A DNA stretch of 37,687 nt, taken from the NCBI RefSeq assembly GCF_006345805.1, contig NW_021836858.1, positions 1 to 37,687 of the forward strand. Reading direction: 5' to 3'. Origin of the DNA: Octopus sinensis (taxonomy: Eukaryota). Positions 4,015 through 32,900 of the stretch are shown here, in pieces. The notes below the pieces were generated by a model. That model saw only the letters and a program-made list of their open reading frames with translations, was not told where the DNA came from and searched no databases. The first letter of the stretch is position 1; each line of letters begins with the position of its first letter. The position numbers were made by a program, and so were the translations under genes.

Positions 4015-4144
4015 GTCTGCAACAATCATGAGATGTGTAAGACTTATATCAGCGACCACGTCAACGCCACGGCCATCGATGCTGCCAAAGTAGAACAAAG
4101 AAAAGGCGAAATATTAAAAAACGTGGACGACTTACTTAAAACAC
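4015..4144 (+). CDS. Exon 1 (first exon seen) of a PKD1/REJ-like GAIN-domain gene: VCNNHEMCKTYISDHVNATAIDAAKVEQRKGEILKNVDDLLKT
   Basis: Acceptor ttttctgttgaag| and donor |gtaagt. 130 nt, open, phase 0 to 1, matching the next exon. The peptide resembles the end of a REJ module. The 5' part of the gene lies outside the window or was not recognised. Confidence 0.75.
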
Positions 4145-4698
4145 GTAAGTAAACTGTTTTTCACTTCATACCACTACATTGCAGTAGCAGACTTTCATGC
4201 TATCAACAAGAATTTATATGGTTCACACACACACACACACACACACACACATCGGTGCAAGTGTGAATGTAGAACACCAACTAAAAATATATATTAAAGG
4301 CGGTGCTCAAGCATGGCCGCAGTCAAATGACTGAAACAAGTAAAAGAGTAAAAGAGTAAAAGAGTAAAAGAGTATACGAGACCAGTACCCGACAAGGCAT
4401 CGAGACCCTATGTATACCGCTAGCGGAGGAATCGCTGTTATATCTGACTTTCGGGCATCAACCATTGACAAGGCTAAGGGAGGCCAGAACCACGTGATTT
4501 GGTAGTCCGAATCACGTGAGTTGGTGGCGATAGTGGATCATTATCTAGCACTAGCGATATAAACACGAGTGCTTACATGCACCACAAGTCCATATGGGAG
4601 GCTATCTCAGTGACACAACATCCGCTTTTATGCGGAGATAAATAAATATATATATATATATATAGATCAAAATAAAAAAACATGATGCGAAGGATTCA

Positions 4699-4776
4699 GC
4701 GGTACATATGTTTCGGGCCTTTATTAGACAGATTTATAACAATGCATAATGTATGTCTGTGGCCTTCTTCAGCCGC
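4699..4776 (-). ncRNA. Mirror-image hammerhead ribozyme motif on the minus strand
   Basis: Exact reverse complement of 4956-5033, in the left arm of the palindrome. Confidence 0.75.
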
Positions 4777-4955
4777 GCACCACAGCTTCCACAAGGACAT
4801 GTGTTACATCAAAAATTCTTGGTTGGGGATGCAAATCCTCTCATTCACGTACGACATAATGCTGCTGCCGCATTATGTCGTACGTGAATGAGAGGATTTG
4901 CATCCCCAACCAAGAATTTTTGATGTAACACATGTCCTTGTGGAAGCTGTGGTGC

Positions 4956-5033
4956 GCGGCTGAAGAAGGCCACAGACATACATTATGCATTGTTATAAAT
5001 CTGTCTAATAAAGGCCCGAAACATATGTACCGC
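4956..5033 (+). ncRNA. Minimal type I hammerhead ribozyme motif (Penelope-type)
   Basis: GCGG-CUGAAGA-A-GGCC...GGCC-C-GAAA-C-AUAU-G-UA/CCGC. Stem I is GCGG:CCGC and stem III is the palindrome ACAUAUGU. Predicted cleavage after A5029. The base of stem II is an A.C mismatch. Confidence 0.75.
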
Positions 5034-5139
5034 TGAATCCTTCGCATCATGTTTTTTATTTTGATCAATTTACTCCACCACCTACACCACCAAACGGTAT
5101 ACACAGGTGCTTATAATTATCAAGTACTCACCCCGAATT

Positions 5140-5196
<57 letters not shown>

Positions 5197-5435
5197 TATG
5201 CGTGTATATATATATATGTACACATATATATGCGTGTATATATATTGTTACTTTGGCGCTCGAAGAAAAATGTTATAAAGTAAAAGTATGGTGTTTTGGA
5301 GGTTCGCTTTTCATCGGATATAGAGGGAAAAGTCTACAGAAGAGAAGGAAGAAGGAAGAAAAGTGATAAGAACAGACAATCACCGAATAAAGCGCGTGCG
5401 TAATTCACATGTGTGATCACTATATTAACACAATG

Positions 5436-5477
<42 letters not shown>

Positions 5478-6550
5478 TTGTGTGTGTGTGTGTGTGAGTG
5501 TGTGTCTCCTGTAAACCAATTTTCGTGAACAACCCAGAGCATTCAGTGATGGACTCTTCCGTCGACGAATGAGTGTTTCGCTTTTTGCCGAGCGACCTGC
5601 ACAAATGAATCGTTTATAGTGATCAAATGTGTGCTGTACATTAGCTCGCTCTCTTCATGAAATCAATGTTGCCTGAATAGGTTCACGGCGTACCACGTGT
5701 CAGGTTTCGAAGTGACCGCAGAGCAACGTGAAAAGGAGTGTTTTGCTTAAGAACACAACGCATCACCTGGTCTAATAATTGAACCACGATCTTGCAAGCG
5801 TCAGTGCAACACCCTTACCACCAGGCCATGCGCTCCCGCATAAAGTACTCAGTATAAGTGCACATTAGAATGAAAAATTTTAACTGGATGATCATCGCTA
5901 TTGATAGTTTCATGTTTTAGACAATCTTCGGATGATTTATAACCAGCGTCTTCCACAAAAGTAGACAAGTACATTTATAAGTTGCTAAACAGTTTTTGAT
6001 CATATGTATTTATTCTGAATCATTAAAAGGAGAAAGGACTACAACTCCTTCTAAAACCTCCTTGCACAGCTGATTTCTTTCTTTTGGGTTACCAGAGATC
6101 GGTTTAATTTTGATATCGAAAAAAAAGCTATAAAATGGGCGAAAATTTATGAATGACAAAATTAGAATCAGTAATGTGACCTGGAAAGTTTTCTGCATTA
6201 ATTCTTAGTTCGGAAAATAAGAGAAGGGTGAGTCACTGGAAAGAAATTATGATTGCAAAATAGAAAAATGTTGTTTGGGATATTATTGAGAAAATGTATA
6301 AAATGCAAAAAGAATAAAATGCTTAGACCAAATATTATGGAAGCAGAGTAAGATAGTTTAATGTTAGTCTACTGAATCTCATACTGAGATACATTTCCAA
6401 AAATTTAGCAGATACTTACAGAGGTGTTGGCATTTCTCTCCTTGGTGTATTGCTTAGCCTTATTAGCTCAGATATGGGAATATTAATCATATGTTAACAT
6501 ATACATTGACTATATCAATATATATATATATATGTATTTTTTTTTTACAG

Positions 6551-6660
6551 AAAACTATTTCGAAGTTTTATTATCATTGATTGGCATCCTTAGAATCGAA
6601 GACAATACCCGCAAAAAGAGATCAGCCGAGCAAGAAATAATGAGCCAGGATGTGATCAAA
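6551..6660 (+). CDS. Exon 2: (Q)NYFEVLLSLIGILRIEDNTRKKRSAEQEIMSQDVIK
   Basis: Acceptor ttttttacag| and donor |gtaaat. Only one frame is open (phase 1 to 0). Contains RKKR/S. Confidence 0.8.
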
Positions 6661-6809
6661 GTAAATTTGCCTTTGTCTTCACAATAATGATATATCCTAT
6701 CAGCCCTTCATCCACTAATTTTTTTTTCATATATTTAAATTGTGAAGAAGCCTGTGACAGTAGAGTACTGAACTAAATGCATTGCAATATTAAGGTTTCG
6801 TGTAGATGA

Positions 6810-7020
6810 TGAGAGGAATAAATCGTAAGCACGCCTGAAAAAGCACGCTTAGCGGGGCATTTCGTCCGTCTTGGCGTTCTGAGATCAAATTCCGCCAAAT
6901 CTGACTTTGCCTCTCATCCTTTCAGGGTGGATAAAATAAGTACTAGTTGAGTACTGAGGTCGATGTAATTGACTGAGCCCCTACCCCGAAATTGCTGGCC
7001 TTGTGCCAAAATTTGAAACT
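6810..7020 (+). mobile_element. Diverged SINE family A' (alternative tail)
   Basis: Degenerate B box and body, tail CCCCGAAATTGCTGGCCTTGTGCC. Similar diverged copies at about 12757-12955 (+) and 31010-31135 (+, followed by (ATT)n), and a fragment at about 3387-3512 (-). Confidence 0.75.
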
Positions 7021-7179
7021 AGCATTTAAGTTTCGTTCCTGCGTTATATTTGATATTTTCACACCGTCAGTTCGTACGAATGGACTGAGGACGAAAACAA
7101 TTCTGTTGTTGATACGTTCAATATCATTCATGTTTATAGATATCCATACAATTTATACATATCTATACACACACACAGA

Positions 7180-7215
<36 letters not shown>

Positions 7216-7269
7216 ACACACACACACATACATACATACATACATACATACGTACATACATACATACAT

Positions 7270-7352
<83 letters not shown>

Positions 7353-8122
7353 CATGGTGTGGTTCTAGTTTCTGGTAATCAAATTCATCTCAGGAAGTAC
7401 TTTCAAAGATATACGCAGGTGATTCTGTGTGCGTGTATGTGTGTGTGTGTGTTTGACATTTACATACACCTGTAGAAATTCATCATGCGAGGGTTGATGG
7501 CATAATTGTGCAATAAAAAACCCACTATAATTACATGTCATTAGCATATGAAAGAAATAATTGATATAATTAATAAACTAAATAATTATTATATCTGGTT
7601 TTCTATGCCTGGAAGATGGATACAAACCCTCACTTCTCCCAACTCCATAGTCCTGTTTACATTTAGTCTATTGTATATCATGCTCGTTGGAACTGATCTC
7701 AAACCAACAAGACAAAAGAAATCAGTTAAGCAGTTGGCTGCAAATGCTGAAGCGATGAGGGTAGTGGTTGCTTCTCATGTCACATCCGAATCCAGGGATG
7801 AAAATAGAAACAATTCTGACAATAAAAATATATAAAAGTAAATCAATTGCTTGTCGCCAGTGTAGCCACAGCTCTACATGGCATCTGTTTGCCTGGAATT
7901 AGATACTACGGTTGAGCATCTTTCCAGTTGTCACAAATGCTGTGTCGGTGCTGAGAGACGATTCCGCAATCAGATCTATTCTCTTATACAAAGCTTGATT
8001 TTTCTATATTTAACTGCTATTGTAATGTTGCCCGAACAGGAATACAAAAAGCAAAAAAAAAACGATTTCGGAATGTATGTAACAGCTGGGTTTTTTTTTT
8101 TTGGTTTTTTTTTTTTAACTAG

Positions 8123-8332
8123 GCCATCAATGCTTGGGAAATGACCGTATTGAAACCGCTATCTGAAAAAGAGGCCATAATTCTTAGCTCTGCAATAGTG
8201 AAACTGGACAATGAGCAATACAACGACGATTTTCTTAAAAAATTTATTTCTAATCTAGACTCCTTGATAAAAATCTTCAAATTAAACAGTCAAAGCATGC
8301 CAGACAGTATTTTTACATCAAGCGTCGACAAA
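8123..8332 (+). CDS. Exon 3: AINAWEMTVLKPLSEKEAIILSSAIVKLDNEQ...SIFTSSVDK (helical GAIN-A-like region)
   Basis: Acceptor ttttttaactag| and donor |gtaagt. 210 nt, phase 0 to 0. Overlaps ORF 8141-8347. Confidence 0.85.
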
Positions 8333-8708
8333 GTAAGTATAAACTGAAAATTCTTAATACCATATGAAATGTCAGTACTTTTTTTTTTTCATCTAATTTT
8401 ATATTTTGCTGTTTGTTGTAGTTGGGGGGTTATTTGTGGGGATGGCGTGCTACATCAAATACATCTGGAGATCTTTTTCAACGCTGGTTTACGTTCCAGA
8501 TCAGTGATTCCCAATCATATTTTGCCTATGGACCGCCGGGGGTTATATGGACGCCCGTTCAGGACAACTGTACCCGATAATAAACTTTGAAGGAATTAAG
8601 ATATAATACAGCTGGCGAGGTCTTTAATTACAGATTCTCCTTTGATTTTTGGTAGAAGCAATTATATTCTTAGAAATCTCACAACGAGAGATATTCAGCA
8701 ACAGTACT

Positions 8709-9851
8709 TTGGAGTAAAAATTGTTTGCCAACATAACATGGCAGTCCTGGTTTAGGACGAATGTTGCTGTAATTTAGCCCCAGGAGACATCGTCTCCAGC
8801 TGGCTATACGACACGATCTGTGTGCTTTTTTGAAAATATACTTTTCTGATTTAGACAAAAGGCCCAAAATGTTGGGGGAAGGGGCCAGTCGATTAGATCG
8901 ACCCCAATACGCAACTGGTATTTAATTTATCGACTCCGAAAGGATAAAAGACAATTTCGACCACGGCAGAATTTGAACTCAGAAAGTAAACACAGACGAA
9001 ATAGCGATTTCTTTAATACCCACAAGGGGCTAAACACAGAGGGAACAAACAAGGACAGACACACGGATTAAGTCGATTATATCGACGCCAGTGCGTAACT
9101 GGTACTTAATTTAGCGACCTCGAAAGGATGATAGGCAAAGTCGACCTCGGCGGAATTTGAACTCAGAACGTAGCGGCAGACGAAATACCTATTTCTTTAT
9201 TACCCACAAGGACAAACAAGGACAGACATAGGTATTAAGTCGATTATATCGACATCAGTGCGTAACTGGTACTTAATTTATCGACCCCGAAAGGATGGAA
9301 GGCAAAGTCGACCTCGGCGGAATTTGAACTCACAACGTAACGGCAGACGAAATACCTATTTCTTTATTACCCACAAGGGGCTAAACATAGAGGTGACAAA
9401 CAAGGACAGACATAGGTATTAAGTCGATTACATCGACCCCAGTGCGTAACTGGTACTTAATTTATCGACTCCGAAAGGATGAAAGCCAAAGTCGACCTCG
9501 GCGGAATTTGAACTCAGAACGTAGCGGCAGACGAAATACCGCTAAGCATTTCTCCCGACGTGCTAACGTTTCTGCCAGCTCGCCACTTTTTATATATTTC
9601 TTTACCACCCACAAGGGGCTAAACATAGAGGGGACAAAGTACCAGTTGCGTATTGGGGTCGATCTAATCGACTGACCCCTTCCCCAAAAATTTTGGGCCT
9701 TTTGTCTAAATCAGAAAAGTATATTTTCAAATAAGGACACAGATCGTGTCGTATAGCCAACTGTAGACGATGTCTCCTGGGGCTAAATTACAGCAACATT
9801 CGTTCTAAATCAGGACTACCATGTTATGTTGGCTAACAATCTTTACTCCAA
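8709..9851. repeat. 212-bp inverted duplication (8709-8920 and 9640-9851) enclosing a SINE concatemer
   Basis: 12 mismatches in 212 bp by manual alignment, no indels. Confidence 0.9.
8841..9586 (-). mobile_element. Head-to-tail concatemer of family A SINE units ending in an A'-type tail
   Basis: GACGAAATAC junctions at 8995, 9179, 9346 and 9530 (periods 184, 167, 184). A single head at about 9530-9586. Confidence 0.88.
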
Positions 9852-11682: not shown

Positions 11683-11684
11683 TA

Positions 11685-11897: not shown

Positions 11898-12144
11898 TTA
11901 CTATTTGTATATTATCAACAGAAAACATGCATGAGGAGATATGTTTGTCCGTTGGTTGTGATAGTAGAATCTAATCACGTCGTTATTCTTAGTTCTGGTG
12001 CTCGTTGCTTCAACCGATTGAAAGTAGTCCTTGGTGACATGGCCCTCATACGCGTCAACTCCTCACTTCCATTTTCATTTATTTAACAACCTAAGTTTTT
12101 GGCCGTCATTATTTATACCATATTGATATTTATACAAAAATTAA

Positions 12145-12372
12145 GGCGGCGAGCTGGCAGAACCGTTAGCACGCCGGGCGAAATGCGTAGCCGTGTTTCG
12201 TCTGCCGTTACGTTCTCAGTTCAAATTCCGCCGAGGTCGACTTTGCCTTCCATCCTTTCGGGGTCGATAAATTAAGTACCAGTTACGCACTGGGGTCGAT
12301 GTAATCGACTTAATCCGTTTGTCTATCCCCTCTGTGTTTAGCCCCTTGTGGGTAATAAAGAAATAGGTATTT
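12145..12372 (+). mobile_element. SINE family A (full length, ends AAAGAAATAGGTATTT)
   Basis: Homology to the other copies; A and B boxes present. Confidence 0.9.
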
Positions 12373-13168: not shown

Positions 13169-13380
13169 GCCTTACAAGCAGCAAGCCGAAACTTCAGTTC
13201 AGAAATATCGCAGAATCTTCTTAACGGTATTCTTGCATTTGCTGGTTCTTATACAAGTCAGAAGAATATCAAATCCGCAAACCTCAACTTGTTTACGACG
13301 AAATCTATGTTGAATCAGCCGTTGACCAGGACACTGACAGAAAAAGTCACTTTCACTCCCGGAGAAACATTAGAGGAAAG
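13169..13380 (+). CDS. Exon 4: ALQAASRNFSSEISQNLLNGILAFAG...TPGETLEE(R)
   Basis: Acceptor ttttgcag|, phase 0 to 2. Donor AG|gttaac at 13380/13381. An alternative donor CC|gtaatt at 13398/13399 has the same phase. Confidence 0.75.
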
Positions 13381-13410
13381 GTTAACACACTATATACCGT
13401 AATTTAGTAG

Positions 13411-13411
<1 letters not shown>

Positions 13412-13446
<35 letters not shown>

Positions 13447-13465
13447 CGTCGTCGTCGTCGTCGTC

Positions 13466-13507
<42 letters not shown>
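13412..13507. repeat. Compound trinucleotide (GTT)11(GTC)7(GTA)14
   Basis: Counted directly; starts 31 nt after the exon 4 donor. Confidence 0.95.
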
Positions 13508-13508
<1 letters not shown>

Positions 13509-13762
13509 ACGATATCCTCACATCAATCCAGATTCAGCAAGTCTAGCATCAAAAGCGTTCCAGCCATGACCATTGCTAGGTCTGCTTCTTCTGGCGCAAT
13601 GTTGCTGAATAACCTACTCAATGAATATTATTATAGCGATTATGGTTTGTGCAGAGTCAGTCCTGCTCTTTCGTCCTTGAAACTTATATTAGTCCGGTAC
13701 AGTAAGTACCACAAGCTCAGTAGATGTCAGGGGGCAGGATAGTAGAGTTACTTTATCTTAGA

Positions 13763-14160
13763 CTAGCAGTATCGCCCGGCGTTACTTGGGTTTGTAAGGG
13801 AAATAACTATATAAGCATTTTTAGAGAGTTATAGCCAAAAAGTAGCAAAAAATGCATTAAAAATGGGAAAAAAATGATGGTAAATTTTTTTTTTTAATCG
13901 TTGACTCATCGTAGACATTTTTAGAGAGTTACTTCCCTTATATAATAGCGAAAAAAATGCATTAAAATGGAAAAAATTATGGTAATTTTTTTTTTAAATC
14001 GTAGACTCATCGTAGACGCGCGCTAATACCCACAAGGGCTCGATATGAATCACGACTATAAGATACCCGGTTTGGGTTAAACTGCACCGCAAAATGTGGG
14101 AGTAGTTAGGAATCTAAATCGTAGGAGACAGACACACAACCTCTCTTTTATGTATAAAGA
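13763..14160 (-). mobile_element. Non-autonomous Helitron, family copy 2
   Basis: Minus strand A|TC...CTAG|T. Homologous to 10244-10760, with an internal duplication of about 105 bp. Confidence 0.85.
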
Positions 14161-14443
14161 TAAACTGTTAAAGAGCAGACGGACCTCATCTACCCTGGGG
14201 CCATTGGAGGTACCTGTCAGGGATCTTCTTCGGGAAGCAATTCCGTGACATACTACTTGATCCATAACTGGGGCCCTGATAAGCGCCACAATTCTGGTTA
14301 AGAGCAGACCTGGAAACAATGATAGTCAACAGGTGATTCCACATTCCTCAAAATCCCGGAATTGCCAAACCAGGGCCCTACTACTGGAAGCACTTTGCCA
14401 AAGACGTTAATCATAACAAACCCGTTCGAAACAACAATGGCCA

Positions 14444-14901
14444 GCTGGGATCTTTTCGGTTTGAACGGCAGTTTTTTCTAGCGGTGTCAAATGAAAATGT
14501 CACCCATAATTATGACCCTAGTATCGATCTATTACATTTCAATATGTTTTAGGGTTAGGGTTAGAGTTAGAGTTAGTTAGGGTTAGGGTTAGGGCTAGGG
14601 GTGGGGGAAGAGTATCTTTTTTTCTTCACAAATGTAAATAAACCCAATCTGTTTCTTAAACGAGAGGATATTCATACGGCACAGAATGTTTTTTTACCTT
14701 AATAGACGTCAGTGATTGGTTGAAATTGCAGAAATTGAAGAAAAAAAAGAACAAATATCTTACAAACTATAGAATGTTCTCCATAAAGCCAAGAGAAAAA
14801 GATGTTTTATAAACACATTCTACCAGTATTCGAAGTTTAAAACTTTTTAATTACCTAGAAATTATGTTAAAAACTGCCGTTCAAACCGAAAAGATCCCAG
14901 C
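14444..14901. mobile_element. Non-autonomous TIR DNA transposon (MITE-like) with internal telomere-type repeats
   Basis: 33-bp perfect inverted repeat GCTGGGATCTTTTCGGTTTGAACGGCAGTTTTT (14444-14476 and 14869-14901). (TTAGGG)-like tract at 14549-14600. The superfamily and TSD were not resolved. Confidence 0.8.
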
Positions 14902-15036
14902 AATGTAACTACAATAAATGTATTCACCCTGGAAATAGTAATACTGTCTCAGCTCTTATTCTTGTACTAAGTACACTTTTTCAAGTTTATTGAAACCTGT
15001 GTTAATATTCAATTTTTTATTTTATGCTCTTTCCAG

Positions 15037-15194
15037 GTATGTCAACTGGGAGTGTAGTAAAACCGAGAAATGTCAAGGAGCTGTAGCACAAATATTGCAG
15101 ATCGCCAACGGAGCCAGTGTGTTTCCTCTGAATGACACCAAAACCGATGTAGTTTCTGACGTGATTGATTTCTCACTCTATAATCCCAGTTCAG
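15037..15194 (+). CDS. Exon 5: YVNWECSKTEKCQGAVAQILQIANG...DVVSDVIDFSLYNPSS(G) (GAIN-B-like)
   Basis: Acceptor ctctttccag| and donor CAG|gtaaaa. Phase 2 to 1. VVSDVIDFSLY..G resembles the polycystin-1-like GAIN strand pattern. Confidence 0.85.
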
Positions 15195-15295
15195 GTAAAA
15201 CATACTAGATATTACACATCACTATCAAATGTGTTACACCATAGAAAGAGGTCTCCAAATTTGCTGCGGGTTGGCATCCGAGCAAAGCTCCCTAC

Positions 15296-15849: not shown

Positions 15850-15901
<52 letters not shown>

Positions 15902-19280: not shown

Positions 19281-20400
19281 ATGTTCAAAGCTATTATTTA
19301 TCTGTCTCATGTTGTTATAATTGTCAGAGTGAGTTTGTGGTGCTCTGTTCTGGAGTCTGTTGTTGAACCTAGTGTTACGTCTTAGTTCCTCAGGTGTATT
19401 GTGTTGGTAGTTGTTTCCTCCGTAGTGCATTTGTTGTTTGTTATGGTTGTATGGTTGGTTCCTGGGGTGGATGTTGGTAGTAGCGTTTTGGTTTGGTTAT
19501 GTGGGTTGTATTTTATAGTATTGTATGTTGTGGCTCTTAGGTTCGTGGAATGGTGTGGTGGGACCCTATAAGTGTTTTGGGGTTGGTGTAGGTAGTGTGG
19601 GGTGCGTTTTAAATGCATTTTTCTGGTGTAGAGTGTGTTTGGATTTCTTGGTGGTTGTTCTGCTCTGTTGGTATGTCTATTTTCGAACTGGTGTGGTGGG
19701 CCTCTGTAGGTGTTTTGGGGTTGGTGTAGGTAGTGTGGGGTGTGTTTTAGGTGTACTTTTCTGGTGTAGAGTGTGGTAGGATTTCTTGGTGGTTGTTCCG
19801 TTCTATTGGTATTTGGTTTTGATTTGCTTAATTTTATGAAGGGGTTGTTGGATATGTGTTCATTTTTGAAGTTGGTTTCATAATCTAGAAACCAGATGGC
19901 GCTCTTTTCCCATCGTTGGAGGGACTTAAGTTCCTCTTTTTCACATTCTTCATTCCATAGTGCTGTTAATGTTTCAGTATTGTTGTCGTCTATTAGTTTG
20001 ATGACTTCTTCGTTGATTTCCTCGTCTATGGTTTTTACTTTTTCTTCATTCGTTTTAGCTCTCAGCTTAAGTAGTTCTATTTCCATCTTCATTTTTTCTA
20101 ATGACATTTTTTCTCTAAGTTTTCTTTGTTCTTCTGGTTCTTCCGAGATGGGTTTGATTTGTAATTTACGGGGTATGACTAGGGGTGTTGAGTCTAGCTA
20201 TTTTGGTAAATCTCTGCTTTATTCTGATTTTGTATCATTTTCCAAAAAGCGAATTTTCTGTTTCGCTGTAGTGTTCTCCATTGGGGGAGGACTTGGTTCT
20301 TTATTTGTAATGTTGAAGTTGCTCGGTTCTTCTCATGTGTTCCTTCTTTTTGTTGCTCTTGTTTCGTAAGTTTGTGAAGAATGTCGTCATTGTATCGCAT
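19197..20400 (-). pseudogene. Penelope-like N-terminal coding region (coiled-coil, then N/H/Q-rich linker) in three frameshifted pieces
   Basis: ORF pieces 20194-20400, 19382-20107 (open upstream to about 20197) and 19197-19430 are contiguous and each is offset by -1. Confidence 0.7.
19551..19814 (-). repeat. Two in-frame 138-bp (46-aa) tandem repeats inside the Penelope-like ORF
   Basis: Units start at 19551 and 19689 (tggtgtggtggg). Peptide NRxEQPPRNPxTLYTRKxHLKxTPHYLHQPQNTYR occurs twice. Confidence 0.9.
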
Positions 20401-20720: not shown

Positions 20721-20766
20721 GGTCTTCTATAAACAACCTGTATATGTTATATATATATATATATGC

Positions 20767-20831
<65 letters not shown>

Positions 20832-22015: not shown

Positions 22016-22228
22016 GATTATTGGAAAGCGTTTCAAACCTGGACAATCCTGTAGTATTTGAAATACAACTTAACGAAATGCTTGAAAATAAAATATATAA
22101 ATGCCTCACCTGGGACTCTGACAAGTCTACCTGGGAAGACTTAGAGACAGCCAAAACAAATCAAAGCAACTCCAGAGTACAGTGTGAAACAACTCATTTG
22201 ACAAAGTTTCTAATTGGACAAGAATCAA
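22016..22228 (+). CDS. Exon 6 with GPS motif: (G)LLESVSNLDNPVVFEI...KCLTWDSDKSTW...VQCETTHL/TKFLIGQES
   Basis: Acceptor aag| after a CT tract and donor |gtaagt. Phase 1 to 1. The pattern C-x2-W...W...C-x-T-x-H-L-T-x-F is the two-cysteine PKD1-type GPS. Predicted autoproteolysis between 22200 and 22201. Confidence 0.88.
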
Positions 22229-22389
22229 GTAAGTCGACAATTAGAACAAAATTATTTTTGTTTTCATTCGTTTTTATAATTTGTTGTTTCATGTACAGCT
22301 GTTTCATATTTCTAATCTAGGTTTTGATGAGTGCTATACATCATATACCCCATATATATATATATATATATATATATATCTATATATAT

Positions 22390-22436
<47 letters not shown>

Positions 22437-22489
22437 GTAAAATATCTACATATATATAAAATGTAAATACATGTGTGTGAGTGAGAGGA

Positions 22490-22562
22490 GAGTGTATGTA
22501 TCTATGTATATATGAATGTATGTATGAATGTATGTATGTAAATATGTATATATGTATGTATG

Positions 22563-22598
<36 letters not shown>

Positions 22599-22811
22599 TG
22601 TATGTATGTATGTATATATGAATGTATGTATGTATGTATATATGTATGTATGTATGTATGTATATATGAATGTATGTATGTATGTATATATGTATGTATG
22701 TATGTATATATGAATGTATGTATGTATGTATGTATGTATGTATGTATGTATGTATGTATGTATATGAATGTATGTATGTGTATGTATGTATGTATGTAGT
22801 ATGATATATGA

Positions 22812-22842
<31 letters not shown>

Positions 22843-23018
22843 TATATGTATGTATGTATGTATGTATATATGAATGTATGTATGTATATGTATGTATGTA
22901 TATGATTGTATGTATGTATATATGAATGTATGTTGTATGTATGTATGTATGTATGTATGTATGTATATATGTATGTAGTATGTATTATGAATTTATGTAT
23001 GTATTGTATGTATGTATG

Positions 23019-23050
<32 letters not shown>

Positions 23051-24951
23051 TGTTATATTGAATGATGTATGTATGTATGTATGTATGTATGTATGTATGT
23101 ATGTATGTATGTATGTATGTATGTATGTATGTGTGTATGTATGTATGTATGTTGATGTATGGTATGTATGATGTATGTATGTATGTATGTTATATTGAAT
23201 GTATGTATGTATGTATGTATTATGTATGTATGTATGTATGTATGTATGTATGTATTATGTATGTATGTAGATATGAATGTATGTATGTATGTATGTATGT
23301 GTATGTAATGTATGTATGTATGTATGTATGTTGTATATGTATGTATGTATGTATGTATGTTGTATGAAATGTATTATGTATGTATGTATGTATGTATTTA
23401 TGTATGTAGGTATGTATGTTCTGTATATGAATGTATGTATGTATGTTAATGTATATTATGAATGTATGTATGTATGTATTATGACGATGTATGTATGTAT
23501 GTATGTTGTATGTATGTATGTATGTATGTAATGTAATGGATGTAATGTATGATGTATGTATGTATGTTATGATGTATGTATGATGTAGTATGTATGTATG
23601 TATGTATGTATGAATGTATGTATGTATGTATGTATGTATGTATGTATGTATGTAGTATATATGAATGTATGTATGTATGTATGTATGTAGGTGATGTCGT
23701 TGTAGTATGTATGTATTGTATGTATGTATGTATATATGTATGTATGTATGTATATATGAATGTATGTATGTATGTATGTATGTATATTTTATGTATGTAG
23801 TATGTATGTATGTATGTATATATGAATGTATGTAGTATGTATGTATGTTGTATGTATGTATGTATGTATGTATATATGAATGTATGTATGTGTGTTATGT
23901 ATGTATGTATGTAATGAATGTATGTATGTATGTATGTATGTTATGTATGTATATATGAATGGTCATGTATGTATGTAATGGATGTATGTATGTATGTATG
24001 TATGTATGTATGTATGTATGTATGTTGTATGTATATGAAGGTATGTATGTATGTATGTATGTATGTATGTATGTATGTATGTATGTATTATGTAATGTAT
24101 GTATGTATGTATGTATGTTATGTATGTATGAATGTATGTATGTATGTATGTATGTATTTATGTATGTATGTATGTATGTATGTAGGTCTATATGAATGTA
24201 TGTATGTATGTATGTATGTATATAATGAATGTATGTATGTATGTATATATATGAATGTAATGTATGTTGTATGTATGTATGTATGTATGTATGTATGTAT
24301 AATGTATGTATGTATGTATGTATGTATTAATATATGAATGTGTATGTTGGATGTGGTATGTATGATGTATGTATTGTAATTGTATGTATGTATATATGAT
24401 GTATGTAGTATGTATGTATGTATGTATGTATGTATGTATGTATGTATGTATGTATGTATGTAGTATGTATGTATGTATGTAGGTAGATTATGTATGTATT
24501 GTATATGTATGTATGGATGTATGTATGTATGTATGTTGGAGGTATGTATGTATGTATTATGATGTATGTATGTATGTATGTATGTATGTATATGTATGTA
24601 TGAATGTATGTATGTATGTTGTATGTATTAATGTATGTATGTATGTATGTATTATGTATGTATGAATGTATGTATGTATGTATGTATGTAATGTATGTAT
24701 GTATGTAGATTATGTATGTATGTATGTATGTAATGTATGTAGTATGTATGTATGTATGTATGTATGTATGTATGTATGTATGTATGTATGTAGTCTTATG
24801 TATATATGTATGTATGTATTATGTGTATGTCTGTATGTATGTAGTATGTTATATGTATGTATGTATGTATGTATATATGAATGAATGTATGTATGTATAT
24901 ATGTATGTATGTATGTATGTATATATGTATATATGAATGTATGTATGTATG

Positions 24952-24982
<31 letters not shown>

Positions 24983-25093
24983 ATATGAATGTATGTATGT
25001 ATGTATGTATGTATGTATGTATGTATGTATGTATGTATGTATGTATATATGTATGTATGTATGTATATATGAATGTATGTATATGTATATATA

Positions 25094-25129
<36 letters not shown>

Positions 25130-25145
25130 TGTATGTATGTATGTA
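22490..25145. repeat. About 2.65 kb degenerate (TATG)n satellite with recurrent TATATGAATG variants
   Basis: Direct reading. All the MYVC/YIHT ORFs here are artefacts. Confidence 0.97.
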
Positions 25146-27342
25146 CACGACTACACGCAAGCATAAACGTTCAATTACATCTCTTTTGCTTCACTCATTT
25201 TTTCAGAAACTAGTCAAGGTGCCGGCGGTGAGTACACGATTATATGTTTTCATTCTCAATGTTTCCTTCACATTTAATGTTTTTATAGAAACATTGGTAT
25301 TGTAGAGTCTCATTTTACACCCTGTTTCCTCCATAAGAACACGCTCATTCATGTAGGTATGCACATGCACAATTTAAGCGGTTGCACGACAGTAGATTGG
25401 GTGTGACGTTTATTTGCTGATTGACGAATCGCAGCGTGTTGCCATTACTAAAAATGTTACGTTTATATTTTCTAAACAACGCTTTTAAACATGTCGGCAT
25501 CATTGTCATTGTTAATATTGTTAATGATGATGGGGTGCTTTGGCTCTGTCCAGATTGCATATACTTAAGATCAAAGTCGTTCCAACCATGAGCCTCTCGT
25601 TATTTCATCAGAGACTACACGACTAAGTTATTCAATGTGTCCTTCCTTTTTCTTAAAGCTGTGAGATGTGTTTTGAGAGAACTTTGACTACTGTTTCTCG
25701 CAGTCCAAGTGACCACGTGGAGTCTACCACAAAGTGTATATTAAGGTAGCAGACGAATCTACACAGAATAATCCATAAAGAAGAAAACACAAAGACTGGC
25801 CTCGACACGATTTGAAGTTTGAGGAACGCAATCTAAAGGTCATGATGCATTCAGTTCGAAGTCTTGCCTTATTGTCCCTCGTCATCACCTTCAATCGATT
25901 TTTTGGACTTCACTTTTATTTTGGGATTATTTATAACGTTGATATCTTTCTCAATATGATTAGTCGTGACATCAATGCCTTTCCTAATATCATGAGTTAA
26001 TACCTTTCTCAGTATCATTAGTGATATAAATTATTTGAATCAACTACCAAAGGAATAGAACCGTTTTTCTTAATGTGTTCACCTAAAAATTCAATATTCA
26101 CTGATTTCTAATTTTTATTTCTTTCTCGATATTGAAAAGGGTGGGGTATGTGTGAGGTCAAACTCTGTACCTCAAGAATATAGCCAATTGAATCGACCCC
26201 AGTATAATACCTCAGAGATATTAAATACCAAAGTCAACACCAGGGATATTTCAACTCCAATCGCAAGGCGTCCAAAACACATACAGTATAGAATTTAATC
26301 TCTGCTCTATCGTACCAGCCATAAATAGGATTTGGGTTTTGACTGAGTGCAAAGTTCACGTGAAAAAATATCCTGACATTTAAAGCTTTCTTGGGGTGTA
26401 TTCACTGTGCAAGTTAACTTTGCACTAAGCAAGAATTGAAACCAAGTTAAGATCGGTCTTCATTCACCAGAAATTTCTGTCTTTCTCCATTGGACTAGCT
26501 GTTCTAATTGTTCTATAACATTGATTTAGTATTGGATAAGAAGAGACAAAAATGCTGGGAAACTTTACTATATGGAAATCAAACGATAAGGTCACTGCTA
26601 ACATTAACTATAGTAAATCAAATAATTGAAATTGAATTAAAATCATAGGCAAAGGAAAGTGAATTTATGATCAATTTTGTTCGCAAAAGTTGAGTCATAC
26701 AGACCTCAGAATTTAGAGAAACTTTTAATGTGAATGAAGAGAAATACAAGATTCAGTGTTTCAATCTCACTTTGAAGTTAGGTATTTGATATTATTTGTG
26801 TAGAAATGTTGATTAAGGAGACCGGACTCACGATTTCAAACCAGAGTTTAAGTGTATCAGTTTATTTACTCTGATAGTACTTTTGAAAAGGTTGATGCAA
26901 TATTTTTCGTTCTTCTAAAAATACTTAATATACGAGGCTCCTGCGCCTAATCACAATTAAACCGATATCATGTATGACATTGAGAATTAAACGATAGTCT
27001 CGAATCTTTATGTTTTGAGTTCAAAAACGCAAGAGGGCAGTAGTGAATAGAGTCAACTCAATCGACTTCACACTTTCCCGCCAAAAGCTGACTTACACAT
27101 TGCAAGAAAGCAATACATCTTCATAGTTGTTATACACAAGAAAACTCTTTGTATATTTATATCACACACACATACACACACACATACATATATATATACA
27201 TACATATTTATATTACACACACATACACACACACATATATACATACATGTTTATATACACACATATATATATATATATATATCATTCATACATACATACA
27301 CACACACGTATATATTTATGCATGTATGTGTATGTGTGTAAA

Positions 27343-27382
<40 letters not shown>

Positions 27383-28376: not shown

Positions 28377-28785
28377 ACTCTTTACTCTTTTACTCTTTTA
28401 CTTGTTTCAGTTATTTGATTGCGGCCATGCTGGAGCACCGCCTTTAGTCGAGCAACTCGACCCCGGGACTTATTCTTTTGTAAGCCCAGTACTTATTCTA
28501 TCGGTCTCTTTTGCCGAACCGCTAAGTAACGGGGACATAAACACACCAGCATCGGTTGTCAAGCAATGCTATGGGGACAAACACAGACACACAAACACAC
28601 ACATGCATATATATATATACATATATACGACGGGCTTCTTTTTTAGTTTCCGTCTACCAAATCCACTCACAAGGCTTTGGTCGGCCTGAGGCTATAGCAG
28701 AAGACACTTGCCCAAGGTGCCACCCAGTGGGACTGAACCCGGAACCATGTGGTTGGTAAACAAGCTACTTACCACACAGCCACTC
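28377..28785 (-). mobile_element. SINE family B with 23-bp TSD
   Basis: TATATAAATGAAACATTATGATT at 28354-28376 and 28794-28816. Further family B pieces at 4293-4375 (+, tail), 21143-21305 (-) and 34010-34056 (-, tail). Confidence 0.92.
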
Positions 28786-30327
28786 AAAATATCTATATAA
28801 ATGAAACATTATGATTCTTCTACATATACCCAATGGGTATTAAGTTCTTCAATATTTCCAGGAGAGACTTTTCAAGCATATCGCAAGAGAAATACATTTA
28901 AATTTTACCTTAAAGAATTCTGATTTTTTCGCACAGTTTGTCCCTCATTTTTTTTCCAATACTTTTTCTTCTTCAGACTGGTTGTTGTGTCACTCTGGTT
29001 AGTTCTGGTTGAAACGATGTTATTTGTTGGTCGCAATATTCGGTCAGTACCGTTCTGTGCAAACTAGCATTGAGTGATTTATCATAGGTTTTCTTCACAG
29101 TCATGTGGTTTCGTATTCAATCACGTAGTTTCGTATTCGACCACGTAGTTTCGTATTCGATCCCACTACACGATACTTTAAACAAATAATTCCTACCATA
29201 ACATGGAGTTGACCTAGGGCTTAATGGAAAATATGAGAAAGTCAATCAGACTGTTCCTGTTCTTGGCTGATGAAACCATTCCGGTGTATTTAGTCAGGAT
29301 ATATTCAGGTTGATTTTCCGTCAACAGCTACCTCCGTTAATAGCTACTTCCCTAAATAGAGACAGCTGCTTGACACTGTGGCCATGAGTATGTACAAATA
29401 GGTAAATACCCCTACTGACACCTCCTCAGAAAATCTAGCATCCATTTGTAACAATAATAGGAAATAGAGCACGTAAAATATAATGTCTGGTTTTAGAAAG
29501 ACAACAAAATATCTATAACTGGTTTCAATCGGGTTTACCGTTGTTGTTTAACCGAGGACAGCCTTGGTTGATAATTGCCATGACTAAAGGCTTTTCGGTC
29601 ATGACTCCATAGCCCGATGTGTTCTTGCGTTTTGGAACGAGAGATATTTGGTAGCTATTTCTTGCAGATCGGGAAACTACAGAGAGGTTCCTACATCGGT
29701 TCACATTTCCTGACTATGTAATGTGATATCTTATCCACATATGCCATTCATTCACGGTAGCATCACATGGCGAAATTCTTCAGTCTATATTCTTACCTTC
29801 CCAACTTTGAGAAGACTCACTATGGACCATTTCAAGATCTTGTTCCCTCTAGTTATGCTCGTCTACTGGGTGTATAATGTTATACAGATATAAGACCTTT
29901 GAAGTGCGACAAACTGGCAGACTTGTTAGATCGTTAGACAAAATATGTTGTTCTGAGCTCAGATCTGGTCGAGGTCAACTTTTCCTTGTGTTCTTCCTGG
30001 TTAGATACGATAATCTCATTCAAGGACTTGGATTGATCATATCTTATGCATTTGTAAAAAATTGAAGCATTTATTTGAGATGTGAGTCGAAGAGCAGAAA
30101 GTAAATGAAGATAAACTCAAGCTCAGTCGAATTTGTGAAGCATTTTCAATTACGGGTAGAAGTTATTTCAGTTTACATCCATCCGCTCTAACAGCACCAG
30201 GGTCAGAGGATGAATGTTACGAATTCTAATTTTCCTTTTCATAACTTTTAGGCTCTTCAGATCTTGTTCGTTAATGCAAACAAATACGTTGGATTTAGTC
30301 ATGGTGTGTGTGTGCGCGTGCGTGTGT

Positions 30328-30368
<41 letters not shown>

Positions 30369-30494
30369 CGTGCGTGTGTGTGCGTGTGTGTGTGTGTGTG
30401 CAGAGAATGTTTCAGGAATTCAATGTCGAAATCATTTCAAGAAGTATATATATACTAAAAAAGTAAAACAGACGCAGTGGATAGAAGGATAATA

Positions 30495-30888
30495 TTCGAC
30501 TCTGAAGACACAAGGTCTGAAATTTTGGAGGAACGGGTCATTCGATTAGATCAACCCCAGTAGGCAACTGGTACTTATTTAATCGACTGCGAAAGGATGA
30601 AAGCAAAGTCGACCTCGACGGAATTTGAATTCAGAATGTAAAGACAGACGAAATACCTATTTCTTTACTACCCACAAGGGGCTAAACACAGAGAGGACAA
30701 ACAAGGACAGACAAACGGATTAAGTCGATTATATCGACCCCAGTGCGTAACTGGTACTTATTTAATCGACCCCCATAGGATGAAAAGCAAAGTCGACCTC
30801 GGCGGAATTTGAACTCAGAATGTAAAGACAGACGAAATACCGCTATGCATTTCACCCGGCGTGCTAACGTTTCTGCCAGCTCACCTCC
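30495..30888 (-). mobile_element. Dimeric SINE (family A unit plus A'-tailed unit)
   Basis: GACGAAATAC at 30647 and 30831 (period 184). Same architecture as 8841-9586. Confidence 0.85.
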
Positions 30889-31134
30889 TTAATAGAAGGA
30901 TAGTATTAATTATATTTATTATATGTAGTATGTCTTTGTGTTGTTTTTAATCTGTTAGGCCCTTGTGGCTAATAGCGCAAATTATTATCATCTTTATTAT
31001 TACTATTATTGAGGTTGACTTTGCTTTTCATCATTTCGGGGTCGATAAATAAAGTATCAGTGAAACATTGGGGTCGATCTAATCGACTAGTCCCCTGACT
31101 CAAAATTTCAGGCCTTGTGCCTTTAGTAGAAAGG

Positions 31135-31170
<36 letters not shown>

Positions 31171-32796
31171 ATTATTAGAGAAAGACTTCGTTTTGGAGCT
31201 CGTATGTTGTTTTGAAGAAAGTAATTTGCCGTTTACTGATGAAACCAACATGCATCCATTTGAGGCTGGTTGGCCTTGTGAAATTTCCGCGCCTCCGGGG
31301 CGAGTTTTGAAACTTTTTGGTAGCAAAATTATAATTTCTTGAAAAAATTACATTATAGCTTCGCAAATCCAGGAAGGGAGTGCTGTTAGCTGTTCCAACA
31401 TCCAATACATTCCCAATTTCTCACCACTACCTGTTAACAGAGAATGTATGAACAACAATAGCAACAACGACGACAAAAGAAACGGCGCGAATGGAAATTC
31501 GTGTGAAGGCAACACTGGCGCCACTTCTACTATTGCCGTCGGAACAAAGGAAAAGTGAGAGAAAGACGCGCTGACGAAAACAGCTAGGACGCAGAAACGG
31601 ACGTAAGAAAAACCTTCAAACAACGACACGCCAACATCGCCAACACCATCATCAGAATCACCACTGCAGAGACAACCGTCATCACAACCATCAGTAAAAC
31701 CCGTTAAACACCAAAACCAAGGACAACCACTAAAATACATCTTGAATTACACGACCGTTCTTACAAATATCATGCACTTACTTCAATGCGCATGTGCTGG
31801 AAATTGCCCGGAAGCAAGATCACATGTGTTAATGACCTCATGACAGTAAATTTAAATTGGGTAGCCATCACCCAAAACACAGGATTTCCGGAACACTCAT
31901 ATTCGCACTCCTCGAGGACTCCGAGGTGTACGCGTGTTTCGGTCAATCCGGATCGTGATTAATGGCAATGTTGTTTTAAGAGGATTTGGGTCTTCAGATC
32001 AGGATGATCCTCTTGGATTTGGATAGTGAATTGGTGACTTTGAATCTATGCAGCAGTAATGGTGGTGCTTTTGGACAGTGGCCGTTTATGCCCTGCCTTG
32101 GACAGAGTGGACAGACTTTAAGCGTCTAGAAGCATTCTTGGTAACGTTCCGCCATCAAGCAACGAAAATGCTATCGCATCGGCAGACAGGGATTGCGCAG
32201 AAATTGACCACATAGAAGGGGTGTTGTAAAAACCGCAGACAGTTCCAGCTCTCTGACAGGCACTGACTAGATTTTCCAAATGTGTCACTATGGACATGGA
32301 CAGCTAGATCTTATGAGTGCTTAGAGCCAATTGTATAAGTATGTGTCCTCAAGATGGTTTAGATAAACATAGCTTCGAACATCATCAATTTCCGTGAATC
32401 GGTTACACAGATCCCAAGGCTGTCATCATCGAAAATTTCTCTCATAACTCTGCTGAATGTAGAGTTTATGATTTTGTCCAAAATGCTCACAAGGAAAGAG
32501 GTTACCATTAGTCGTTGATGCCACGATGAAAGTTCTCAGTAAATTCGACAATTCGTACTTGGCCACTGCCCTCAGTTAAGTCAGTTTCAATTTTGTTTTT
32601 AGAGGCTGTGTCGCTTCAATGTACGGCGGTATCAGCTCAGGATTAGGTTAATTAACCCTTTCCAAACCGTTTTGAATCATCACCAACCCTTAAATCCTTT
32701 TAACCATATCGATAATATGATCAACATGTCTTATTTATTAACTTCTAAACCAAAGTTCGATATTTGTGTAATAAATGTTATTAATGGTTCTTTCAG

Positions 32797-32900
32797 GTTA
32801 TAAGTCTTCTGCGATAAGGCCCTCTCTATGCGTAAGCCTCTTTATCCTATACTTATCTTGTGCAATTATTTATCCCTGGAGACTTGTACATCAGACATGA
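32797..32900 (+). CDS. Probable terminal exon 7: (S)YKSSAIRPSLCVSLFILYLSCAIIYPWRLVHQT*
   Basis: Acceptor ttctttcag|, phase 1. About 19-residue hydrophobic helix, then TGA at 32898-32900. AATAAA at 33069-33074. No better phase-1 exon was found between 22229 and 32796. Confidence 0.55.

What the first reader, a model, noticed from the sequence alone, without database searches (positions are those of the whole stretch)
4015..32900. Polycystin-1/REJ-like GAIN protein that appears to stop after one transmembrane helix
Seven exons join without a frame conflict into 378 aa: REJ-like end, GAIN-like region, PKD1-type GPS, then one hydrophobic helix and a 6-residue tail (RLVHQT*), with AATAAA about 170 nt downstream. 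Canonical PKD1-like proteins continue into PLAT and ten more helices, and adhesion GPCRs continue into 7TM. A single-pass layout recalls sea urchin sperm receptor REJ1. A cephalopod example would be a signalling-dead or cell-surface tethered polycystin ectodomain. None of the exons is obvious from the ORF track alone.
Basis: partly seen in the sequence, partly recalled or inferred. Interest (0 to 1): 0.7.

Follow-up and report, generated by a model that had tools for sequence, protein, structure and literature searches.

The report
Single-pass REJ–GAIN receptor gene fragment
This octopus scaffold holds the middle-to-3' part of a gene for a one-helix membrane protein with a polycystin-like (REJ + GAIN) outer part. 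It is an ordinary member of an old family first seen in sea urchins, and its odd short ending is an alternative exon that looks terminal only because the scaffold ends before the usual last exon.

Summary
The exon chain is real. They equal RefSeq XP_029657927.2 (Octopus sinensis LOC115232225, 398 aa) minus an artefactual ATG extension and one missed 21-nt microexon (25207-25227).

The product has the end of a REJ domain, a GAIN fold and an HL^T GPS. The AlphaFold model's best PDB matches are all adhesion-GPCR GAIN domains.

The window is a whole 37.7-kb unplaced scaffold, so the gene is cut at both ends. Orthologues in O. bimaculoides, O. vulgaris and Argonauta carry about 250-560 more N-terminal residues (REJ). 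They also carry a canonical last exon with a strong TM helix and a conserved 22-aa tail. In O. bimaculoides that exon lies 9.9 kb past the 'RLVHQT*' exon, about 6 kb beyond this scaffold's end.

The 'RLVHQT*' exon is an alternative exon whose flanks are conserved from Octopus to Argonauta.

The protein is still single-pass. Orthologues stop 22 aa after the helix, with no PLAT and no channel helices. Nearly all relatives have exactly one TM, including sea urchin SpREJ8, described in 2007.

Verdict: a new member of a known kind, not a truncated polycystin. The conserved tail argues against 'signalling-dead'.

The parts
4015..4144 (+). Coding exon: last ~43 aa of the REJ domain (VCNNHEMCKTY...LLKT). 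The true acceptor is at 4013-4014. RefSeq's ATG at 3976 is an artefactual start caused by the scaffold end.
   Evidence: Orthologues join '...KFSVE|VCN(S/K)YGMC' here. Pfam REJ on the Argonauta orthologue runs to aa 598, which aligns to this exon.
6551..6660 (+). Coding exon (NYFEVLLSLIGILRIEDNTRKKRSAEQEIMSQDVIK): start of the helical GAIN subdomain A, with a basic RKKR site.
   Evidence: AF2 helices 36-74.
8123..8332 (+). Coding exon, GAIN subdomain A helices.
13169..13380 (+). Coding exon: end of subdomain A and start of the beta-sandwich subdomain B.
   Evidence: 98% identical to the O. vulgaris model P0003.
15037..15194 (+). Coding exon, GAIN subdomain B (W..C....C.G motif, nearly invariant C240).
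22016..22228 (+). Coding exon with the GPS: C316, W326, C343 and H347-L348^T349 (HLT codons 22195-22203).
   Evidence: the best-conserved exon across all 29 HMMER relatives.
25207..25227 (+). It encodes stalk between the GPS and the membrane.
   Evidence: A 21-nt microexon sits at the same position in Argonauta and is present in O. bimaculoides (KISQGSS).
32797..32900 (+). Alternative exon that carries the stop (GYKSSAIRPSLCVSLFILYLSCAIIYPWRLVHQT*). It encodes a weakly hydrophobic helix and a 6-aa tail.
   Evidence: It is used in O. bimaculoides model P0033 and skipped in P0035. Its homologue sits in an Argonauta intron, upstream of that gene's canonical last exon.
32745..32966 (+). Conserved block around the alternative exon. 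It includes the shared acceptor TTCTTTCAG|GT and an invariant donor-like TTGGTAGGTAATTT (GT at 32921 and 32925) after the stop.
   Evidence: 75.5% nt identity over 200 bp to Argonauta. The flanks are 79% and 85% identical, against 61-74% for constitutive exons. Identity to O. bimaculoides is 94.4%, among the highest segments of the window. Three-way alignment.
33069..33074 (+). AATAAA, a possible poly(A) signal if the alternative exon is used as a terminal exon.

Best explanation
The window is one whole unplaced scaffold of the Octopus sinensis assembly. It carries eight internal and 3' exons of a large type I membrane protein of the single-pass REJ-GAIN family.

The full protein is inferred from orthologues. 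From the N-terminus it has Cys-rich repeats, a ~450-aa REJ domain, a GAIN domain with an HL^T autoproteolysis site, a short stalk, one strongly hydrophobic TM helix and a conserved 22-aa cytoplasmic tail.

The 5' REJ exons and the canonical last exon (TM + tail) both lie just off the scaffold. The next upstream exon is about 1.7 kb before the scaffold start. The canonical last exon is about 6 kb past its end.

It is an alternative exon with an in-frame stop and deeply conserved flanks. Including it replaces the canonical anchor and tail with a weak hydrophobic helix plus RLVHQT.

Inferred mechanism, not shown here. The GAIN domain cleaves itself at H347-L348^T349. The large REJ ectodomain stays non-covalently attached to a stub made of the tethered peptide and one TM. 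The protein then acts as an adhesion or ligand/mechano-sensing surface receptor, as proposed for sea urchin REJ proteins. It would signal through partners bound by its conserved tail rather than through a channel or 7TM module of its own. The alternative exon would tune anchoring or abundance.
For: The window is the whole of VCDQ01001268.1, 37,687 bp.

The exon model reproduces XP_029657927.2 exactly with GT-AG sites.

Full HMMER over 1.84e9 proteins finds 29 relatives. They include the Argonauta orthologue (957 aa, E=4e-106), Patella and Pomacea 'GAIN-B domain' proteins, S. purpuratus receptor for egg jelly 8, and other echinoderm and hemichordate proteins.

Pfam REJ scores E=4e-50 to 5e-97 in the relatives.

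The 16 distinct relatives with a membrane anchor after the GPS region have exactly one TM there. The exception is one 7TM aGPCR.

The AF2 model has pLDDT 78, with helices 36-187, a beta-sandwich 194-357 and a helix 374-396. The top five Foldseek PDB hits are all GAIN domains (4dlo, 8oek, 8hc0, 6v55; E=3e-9 to 2e-6).

O. bimaculoides has two models of the orthologue. P0033 ends in RLVHQT*. P0035 (XP_014775389.1) ends in ...LIGAIVGSVIGVIILAIVGVALAKYLKDRSNRVVPFEGTNAQNTA*. In its locus the alternative exon is at 49986-50093 and the canonical exon at 59951-60109.

The window is collinear with that locus and ends at about 53.9 kb of it. The canonical exon is absent from the window.

TM + tail is 86% identical between Octopus and Argonauta, against 58% for the ectodomain. 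Conservation of the alternative exon is shown.
Against: No transcript data could be examined. Which 3' exon O. sinensis uses, and in what tissues, rests on gene models from three species.

The position of the canonical exon in O. sinensis is extrapolated from O. bimaculoides collinearity and was not seen.

Pfam GPS on the window protein alone is below threshold (E=0.015).

Autoproteolysis, topology and any ligand are inferred from family knowledge.

None of the cephalopod models has a signal peptide, so even the orthologue models are probably 5'-incomplete.
Confidence: 0.85

Rival explanations
1. One reading: the main product in Octopus ends at RLVHQT*. That would make it a tethered, tail-less REJ/GAIN ectodomain anchored by the weak helix SLCVSLFILYLSCAIIYPW, polyadenylated after the AATAAA at 33069.
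For: Two independent annotations use this exon as the CDS end: O. sinensis RefSeq and O. bimaculoides A0A0L8H652. The peptide is 91% identical between the two Octopus species, the best of all exons. AF2 models it as a helix. Its KD of 1.96 is above the usual 1.6 cut-off. AATAAA lies 169 nt downstream.
Against: A canonical exon with a far stronger TM (KD 2.87) and a conserved tail exists in O. bimaculoides and Argonauta. The O. sinensis model could not have used it because the scaffold ends first. In Argonauta a 2-nt indel shifts the frame of the homologous exon. It then reads GTKSSVIRPSISISLVILCSYIGQ*, whose hydrophobic part is too short to span a membrane (KD 1.54). Nucleotide conservation nevertheless continues through and past the stop. 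The constraint is therefore not on this peptide.
Confidence: 0.15
2. Exon 32797-c.32920/32924 is a 'poison' cassette exon. When included between the microexon and the canonical last exon, its stop triggers nonsense-mediated decay, so it regulates abundance rather than making a protein isoform.
For: The intronic flanks are more conserved than the coding exons. An invariant donor-like TTGGTAG|GTAATTT lies 20-25 nt after the stop in Octopus and Argonauta. The reading frame is not conserved but the in-frame stop is. Cassette length would be 124 or 128 nt, not a multiple of 3.
Against: No transcript evidence for use of the downstream donor could be obtained. The peptide is well conserved within Octopus. 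A poly(A) signal is present.
Confidence: 0.3
3. It is the 5' part of a classical 11-TM PKD1-like/PKDREJ gene whose PLAT and channel exons lie further downstream.
For: REJ + GAIN + GPS is the polycystin-1 ectodomain module, and the scaffold is truncated.
Against: Orthologues with complete 3' ends stop 22 aa after the single TM. Pfam finds no PLAT or PKD_channel in any relative scanned. None of the 29 HMMER relatives is an 11-TM protein. There are no Pfam hits in downstream ORFs of the window. No further gene was called in the 10 kb after the Argonauta stop.
Confidence: 0.02
4. The scaffold holds a decaying partial duplicate (pseudogene) of the real gene located elsewhere in the O. sinensis genome.
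For: It is a short unplaced scaffold. The ectodomain evolves fast (75-84% aa identity between two Octopus species).
Against: All eight exons keep open frames and canonical splice sites. Exons and introns are collinear with the single O. bimaculoides locus at 80-95% nt identity. No second O. sinensis copy appeared in the protein searches.
Confidence: 0.05

Closest known systems
Sea urchin receptor-for-egg-jelly proteins with one TM (SpREJ8, SpREJ9; also suREJ1)
   Same: REJ domain, GPS/GAIN just outside the membrane, one TM helix, short cytoplasmic tail, and no PLAT or channel part. SpREJ8 is a direct HMMER hit (E=1.8e-9 over query 9-358). Gunaratne et al. 2007 describe SpREJ8 and 9 as having 'only one putative TM' (PMC1934368).
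   Different: Only ~25% identical. SpREJ8 is 3274 aa with a different N-terminal region. The cephalopod tail (KYLKDRSNRVVPFEGTNAQNTA) has no counterpart there. SpREJ8 is expressed in embryos rather than shown to be a sperm receptor. No function is known for the mollusc proteins.
Polycystin-1 / PKD1-like / PKDREJ (11-TM PKD1 family)
   Same: REJ domain followed by a GAIN domain with an HL^T GPS that has a single Cys before HLT (two-Cys GPS pattern; from my knowledge of PKD1). Large adhesive ectodomain.
   Different: No PLAT domain after TM1 and no further ten helices or channel-like region. Orthologues end 22 aa after TM1.
Adhesion GPCR GAIN domains (BAI3/ADGRB3 4DLO, ADGRB2 8OEK, GPR110 8HC0, Gpr126 6V55)
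   Same: The same two-subdomain fold (helical A, beta-sandwich B with the GPS strand). These are the only significant Foldseek hits.
   Different: 11-16% sequence identity and no 7TM domain. The GPS has two rather than four cysteines.
Drosophila Cirl/latrophilin 1TM splice isoform
   Same: A GAIN-bearing protein produced as a single-pass variant, with the membrane part changed by alternative splicing. It is reported to work with a partner receptor (review PMC13197933).
   Different: There the alternative is 7TM versus 1TM of an aGPCR. Here both isoforms are at most 1TM, and the switch is between two different C-terminal exons. No homology beyond the GAIN fold.

Membership tests
Single-pass REJ-GAIN proteins (SpREJ8/9-like clade of the PKD1/REJ superfamily) | REJ domain (Pfam PF02010) in the ectodomain | tested here: met
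   Orthologues P0002 (E=3.9e-50, aa 215-598), P0003, P0033 and P0035 carry it. The window holds only its last ~43 aa (exon 4015-4144), which aligns to P0002 554-600. The rest is off-scaffold.
Single-pass REJ-GAIN proteins (SpREJ8/9-like clade of the PKD1/REJ superfamily) | GAIN domain with a GPS (HL^T/S) directly before the membrane | tested here: met
   HLT at aa 347-349. The AF2 fold and Foldseek match GAIN structures. C240, C316, W326 and C343 are nearly invariant across 18 relatives.
Single-pass REJ-GAIN proteins (SpREJ8/9-like clade of the PKD1/REJ superfamily) | Exactly one TM helix after the GPS, short tail, no PLAT | tested here: met
   Hydropathy scan of all relatives. The orthologue C-termini are complete. 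No PLAT or PKD_channel was found in Pfam scans.
Single-pass REJ-GAIN proteins (SpREJ8/9-like clade of the PKD1/REJ superfamily) | Detectable sequence homology to a named member | tested here: met
   SpREJ8 NP_001075437 scores E=1.8e-9 over query 9-358.
Polycystin-1 / PKD1-like (11-TM) | PLAT/LH2 domain after TM1 | tested here: not met
   No PLAT hit in P0002, P0003, P0007, P0009 or P0013, nor in window ORFs downstream of 32900. Orthologues end 22 aa after the TM.
Polycystin-1 / PKD1-like (11-TM) | Eleven TM helices, the last six channel-like | tested here: not met
   One TM after the GPS in the orthologues and in the 16 distinct relatives that have a membrane anchor.
Adhesion GPCR | 7TM domain following the GAIN domain | tested here: not met
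   Only one distant hit (P0023) has 6-7 hydrophobic helices. The orthologues have one.
GAIN domain (any carrier) | Autoproteolysis at HL^T yielding non-covalently bound NTF/CTF | not testable with these tools
   The consensus H-L-T is present and conserved (HLT in Octopus, HLS in Argonauta). Cleavage itself needs a western blot of expressed protein.

The most novel reading that the evidence does not exclude
The 'RLVHQT*' exon is a functional, regulated alternative exon kept since before the Octopus-Argonauta split. It switches this REJ-GAIN receptor between two states. One is a firmly anchored form with a conserved signalling tail. The other is either a tail-less, weakly anchored or shed form, or an NMD-targeted transcript. 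This would be a splice-controlled way of tuning a GAIN-domain surface receptor, and it has not been described for REJ-family proteins.
Probability: 0.4. Interest if true: 0.4.

Novelty: new member of a known kind. Interest (0 to 1): 0.27.

Why it matters
It corrects an attractive but misleading reading. The cephalopod protein is not a polycystin that lost its channel half. It belongs to an old, widespread and functionally unstudied clade of single-pass REJ-GAIN receptors found in molluscs, echinoderms and hemichordates.

For annotation, LOC115232225 is a fragment cut at both ends by a scaffold break, and its C-terminus is an alternative exon.

For biology, the strongly conserved TM + tail and the deeply conserved alternative exon are concrete handles. 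They could be used to ask how GAIN-domain proteins without a 7TM or channel module signal. The fast-evolving ectodomain is compatible with, but does not show, a gamete- or cell-recognition role like suREJ1.

Tried and rejected
1. Pfam and PDB sequence searches of the 398-aa protein alone gave almost nothing: GPS E=0.015, and one chance PDB hit at E=0.6.
2. The search for homologous proteins with the window protein returned only the protein itself. With exons 5-8 it returned nothing, 14 candidates. The word index clearly misses close relatives that the full HMMER scan and a query with P0003 found.
3. I tested a frameshift explanation for the odd C-terminus. The other frames of the last exon, and a DNA alignment to the Argonauta canonical exon, show no similarity.
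4. I tested whether the alternative exon is a tandem duplicate of the canonical exon. The alignment score is no better than shuffles, with 343/500 and 499/500 shuffles reaching it. Rejected.
5. I searched for the canonical TM exon inside the window by nhmmer, tblastn and a hydropathy scan of all + frames after 32900. It is absent. One script looped and was repeated.
6. The O. vulgaris locus could not be fetched because the gene range is 157 kb.
7. Read-through of the donor at 22228 gives a hydrophobic ORF (...KLFLFSFVFIICCFMYSCFIFLI*). I treated it as T-rich intron sequence, not a conserved anchor, because the orthologues splice here.
8. The donor GTAAGC at 32832 would leave phase 0. That is incompatible with the phase-1 canonical exon, so it is not favoured.


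Full report
**What is in the sequence**

The window is AT-rich, repeat-laden animal DNA. On the + strand, eight short open segments with canonical GT-AG borders join into one reading frame. They are 3976/4015-4144, 6551-6660, 8123-8332, 13169-13380, 15037-15194, 22016-22228, 25207-25227 and 32797-32900.

That protein is XP_029657927.2, 'uncharacterized protein LOC115232225 [Octopus sinensis]', 398 aa.

This is the same model without the 13-residue ATG extension and without a 21-nt microexon (KTSQGAG), which is frame-neutral. AATAAA lies 169 nt after the stop.

**What the protein is**

Sequence-profile evidence on the fragment alone is thin. Pfam GPS scores E=0.015, below threshold, and the PDB sequence search gives nothing.

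A full HMMER scan of 1.84 billion representatives gave 29 relatives. By their source names they are:
- An Argonauta hians orthologue (957 aa, 49% identity, E=4e-106).
- An Octopus vulgaris model, 98% identical over exons 4-5.
- A Sepia fragment.
- 'GAIN-B domain-containing' proteins of Pomacea and Patella.
- S. purpuratus receptor for egg jelly 8 (SpREJ8).
- Further proteins of sea urchins, starfish, crinoids, brittle stars, a sea cucumber, a bivalve and the hemichordate Ptychodera.

Pfam finds a full REJ domain in these relatives (E=4e-50 to 5e-97). In the Argonauta orthologue it ends exactly in the residues that align to the window's first exon.

An AlphaFold2 model built on 18 relatives has mean pLDDT 78. 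It has a helical bundle (aa 36-187), a beta-sandwich (194-357) ending in the HLT strand, and a C-terminal helix (374-396). Its only significant PDB matches are the GAIN domains of BAI3, BAI2, GPR110 and Gpr126 (E=3e-9 to 2e-6, probability 1.00). GAIN + GPS is confirmed at the fold level.

**Is one TM helix real?**

Yes, as a family trait. A hydropathy scan shows that the 16 distinct relatives with a membrane anchor after the GPS region have exactly one strongly hydrophobic segment. It lies about 30-60 residues after the HL(T/S), or after the aligned GPS region where my motif was not matched, and is followed by a short tail. One distant hit is instead a 7TM adhesion GPCR.

No PLAT or PKD_channel domain is found in the relatives or in open frames downstream of 32900 in the window. 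Gunaratne et al. (2007) already described SpREJ8 and SpREJ9 as having 'only one putative TM' (PMC1934368).

This is not a polycystin that stops early. It is a member of a single-pass REJ-GAIN clade.

**Why the C-terminus looked odd**

The window is the whole of scaffold VCDQ01001268.1 (37,687 bp) of assembly GCA_006345805.1. Orthologues show that the gene is cut at both ends.

At the 5' end, O. bimaculoides, O. vulgaris and Argonauta models continue upstream through '...KFSV(E/Q)|' into about 250-560 more residues of REJ domain. None of those residues is encoded in window 1-3975.

At the 3' end, O. bimaculoides has two models of the orthologue LOC106872793:
- A0A0L8H652 (P0033, 639 aa) ends ...GHKSSAIRPSLCVSQFILYLYCAIIYPWRLVHQT*.
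- XP_014775389.1 (P0035, 656 aa) skips that exon and ends ...VSGSTSLIGAIVGSVIGVIILAIVGVALAKYLKDRSNRVVPFEGTNAQNTA*.

The Argonauta protein ends almost identically to the second model.

In the O. bimaculoides locus the 'RLVHQT' exon is at 49986-50093 and the canonical last exon at 59951-60109, 9.9 kb further on. The window is collinear with that locus. Window 32680-33193 matches 49873-50388 and window 35780-36418 matches 51997-52625. The scaffold therefore ends at about 53.9 kb of the locus, roughly 6 kb short of the canonical exon. By the same collinearity, the preceding REJ exon lies about 1.7 kb before the scaffold start.

Direct searches confirm that the canonical exon is not in the window.

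**The alternative exon**

Its homologue is present in Argonauta inside the intron, about 380 bp upstream of that gene's canonical last exon. The acceptor is the same (TTCTTTCAG|GT) and identity is 75.5% over 200 bp.

Identity is 72% in the 'coding' part, 79% in the 50 nt upstream and 85% in the 66 nt downstream of the stop. The downstream stretch includes an invariant donor-like TTGGTAGGTAATTT. The constitutive coding exons are only 61-74% identical.

A 2-nt indel shifts the frame in Argonauta. It reads GTKSSVIRPSISISLVILCSYIGQ*, with best hydropathy 1.54, too short to span a membrane. Nucleotide conservation continues regardless. Between the two Octopus species this is the best-conserved exon (91% aa) and among the best-conserved DNA segments (94.4%).

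This pattern points to a regulated alternative exon rather than a conserved TM domain. I cannot tell from sequence whether it acts as an alternative terminal exon (AATAAA at 33069) or as a stop-carrying cassette that triggers NMD.

It is not a duplicate of the canonical exon, and its peptide is not a frameshifted version of the canonical one.

**How it most likely works**

Shown:
- A REJ end, GAIN fold and HL^T motif.
- A single-pass architecture in the orthologues.
- A canonical TM + tail that is 86% identical between Octopus and Argonauta, while the ectodomain is 58% identical.
- An ectodomain that diverges quickly even within Octopus (75-84%).

Inferred from what is established for GAIN domains and REJ proteins:
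- Autoproteolysis at H347-L348^T349 leaves the large ectodomain non-covalently bound to a stalk + TM stub.
- The protein serves as an adhesion or ligand/mechano-sensing surface receptor.
- It signals through partners bound by its conserved tail or TM, since it has no channel or 7TM module of its own.

The conserved tail argues against 'signalling-dead'. A precedent for a 1TM GAIN protein working with a partner receptor is the 1TM isoform of Drosophila Cirl (PMC13197933).

**Comparison and novelty**

The nearest described proteins are SpREJ8/9, and suREJ1 for layout. The window protein meets every feature of that single-pass REJ-GAIN group that I could test. It fails the PLAT and 11-TM criteria of polycystin-1 and the 7TM criterion of adhesion GPCRs.

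The gene is already annotated, as 'uncharacterized' in O. sinensis and as a 'PKD/REJ-like domain-containing protein' in O. bimaculoides. No paper in the searchable library treats a cephalopod REJ protein. I rate it a new member of a known kind.

The only mildly new element is the deeply conserved alternative 3' exon.

**Limits**

No transcript data could be consulted. The last homology search failed and the O. vulgaris locus was too long to fetch. Isoform usage, cleavage, topology and function remain to be tested as listed under next steps.

Noticed in passing
window 16935-20107, minus strand (intron between exons 15037-15194 and 22016-22228): A retroelement with four consecutive ORFs of 241, 312, 303 and 135 aa. 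The last carries a GIY-YIG endonuclease domain (Pfam E=2e-7), which suggests a Penelope-like element. The RT-like ORFs gave no Pfam hit at E<=0.01. The segment has no counterpart in the collinear O. bimaculoides alignment (no match for window ~13.8-21.4 kb), so it may be a lineage-specific insertion.
   Followed up: partly
window 22493-25145: A 2.65-kb (TGTA)n microsatellite of 676 copies at 83% match. It fills most of the intron between the GPS exon and the microexon and causes the strong GC/AT skew seen in the composition profile.
   Followed up: partly
window 2000-2451: A 52-bp tandem repeat of 8.7 copies, 98% identical (score 862), upstream of the first exon.
   Followed up: no
window 8887-9540; also 3048-3282, 12143-12365, 28626-28742, 33190-33520, 37246-37560 and others: Many copies, in both orientations, of short interspersed repeats (translated as '...RNWYLIYRLRKDGRQSRPRRNLNSE...'). 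One forms a 184-bp tandem array. Copies also occur in the Argonauta and O. bimaculoides loci. ARAGORN finds no intact tRNA.
   Followed up: partly
window 22229-22320: Reading through the donor at 22228 gives ...QESSKSTIRTKLFLFSFVFIICCFMYSCFIFLI*, a hydrophobic C-terminus straight after the GPS. It is probably just T-rich intron, but an intron-retaining transcript would encode a different anchored stub.
   Followed up: partly
window 13169-15205 versus O. vulgaris CAI9726334.1 (P0003): The O. vulgaris gene model joins the REJ exons directly to exon 13169, skipping the three exons at 4015-8332 while staying in frame. It ends by read-through of the donor at 15194 (…SSGKTY*). Its gene range is 157 kb and it is named 'serine-rich adhesin for platelets-like'. 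It is likely a mis-model or a truncated isoform.
   Followed up: partly
window 35406-35840, minus strand: A 144-aa ORF (…LMRPILEYGIQASSPYLLKDIQHLERVQKLATRMV…RRRRGDLI…). From memory it resembles the C-terminal part of a LINE reverse transcriptase. There was no Pfam hit at E<=0.01.
   Followed up: partly
window 6551-6660 (aa 74-78 of XP_029657927.2): A basic RKKR motif, conserved as RKKR or RRRRR in mollusc and echinoderm relatives, sits in a low-confidence loop of GAIN subdomain A. It could be a furin-type processing site.
   Followed up: no
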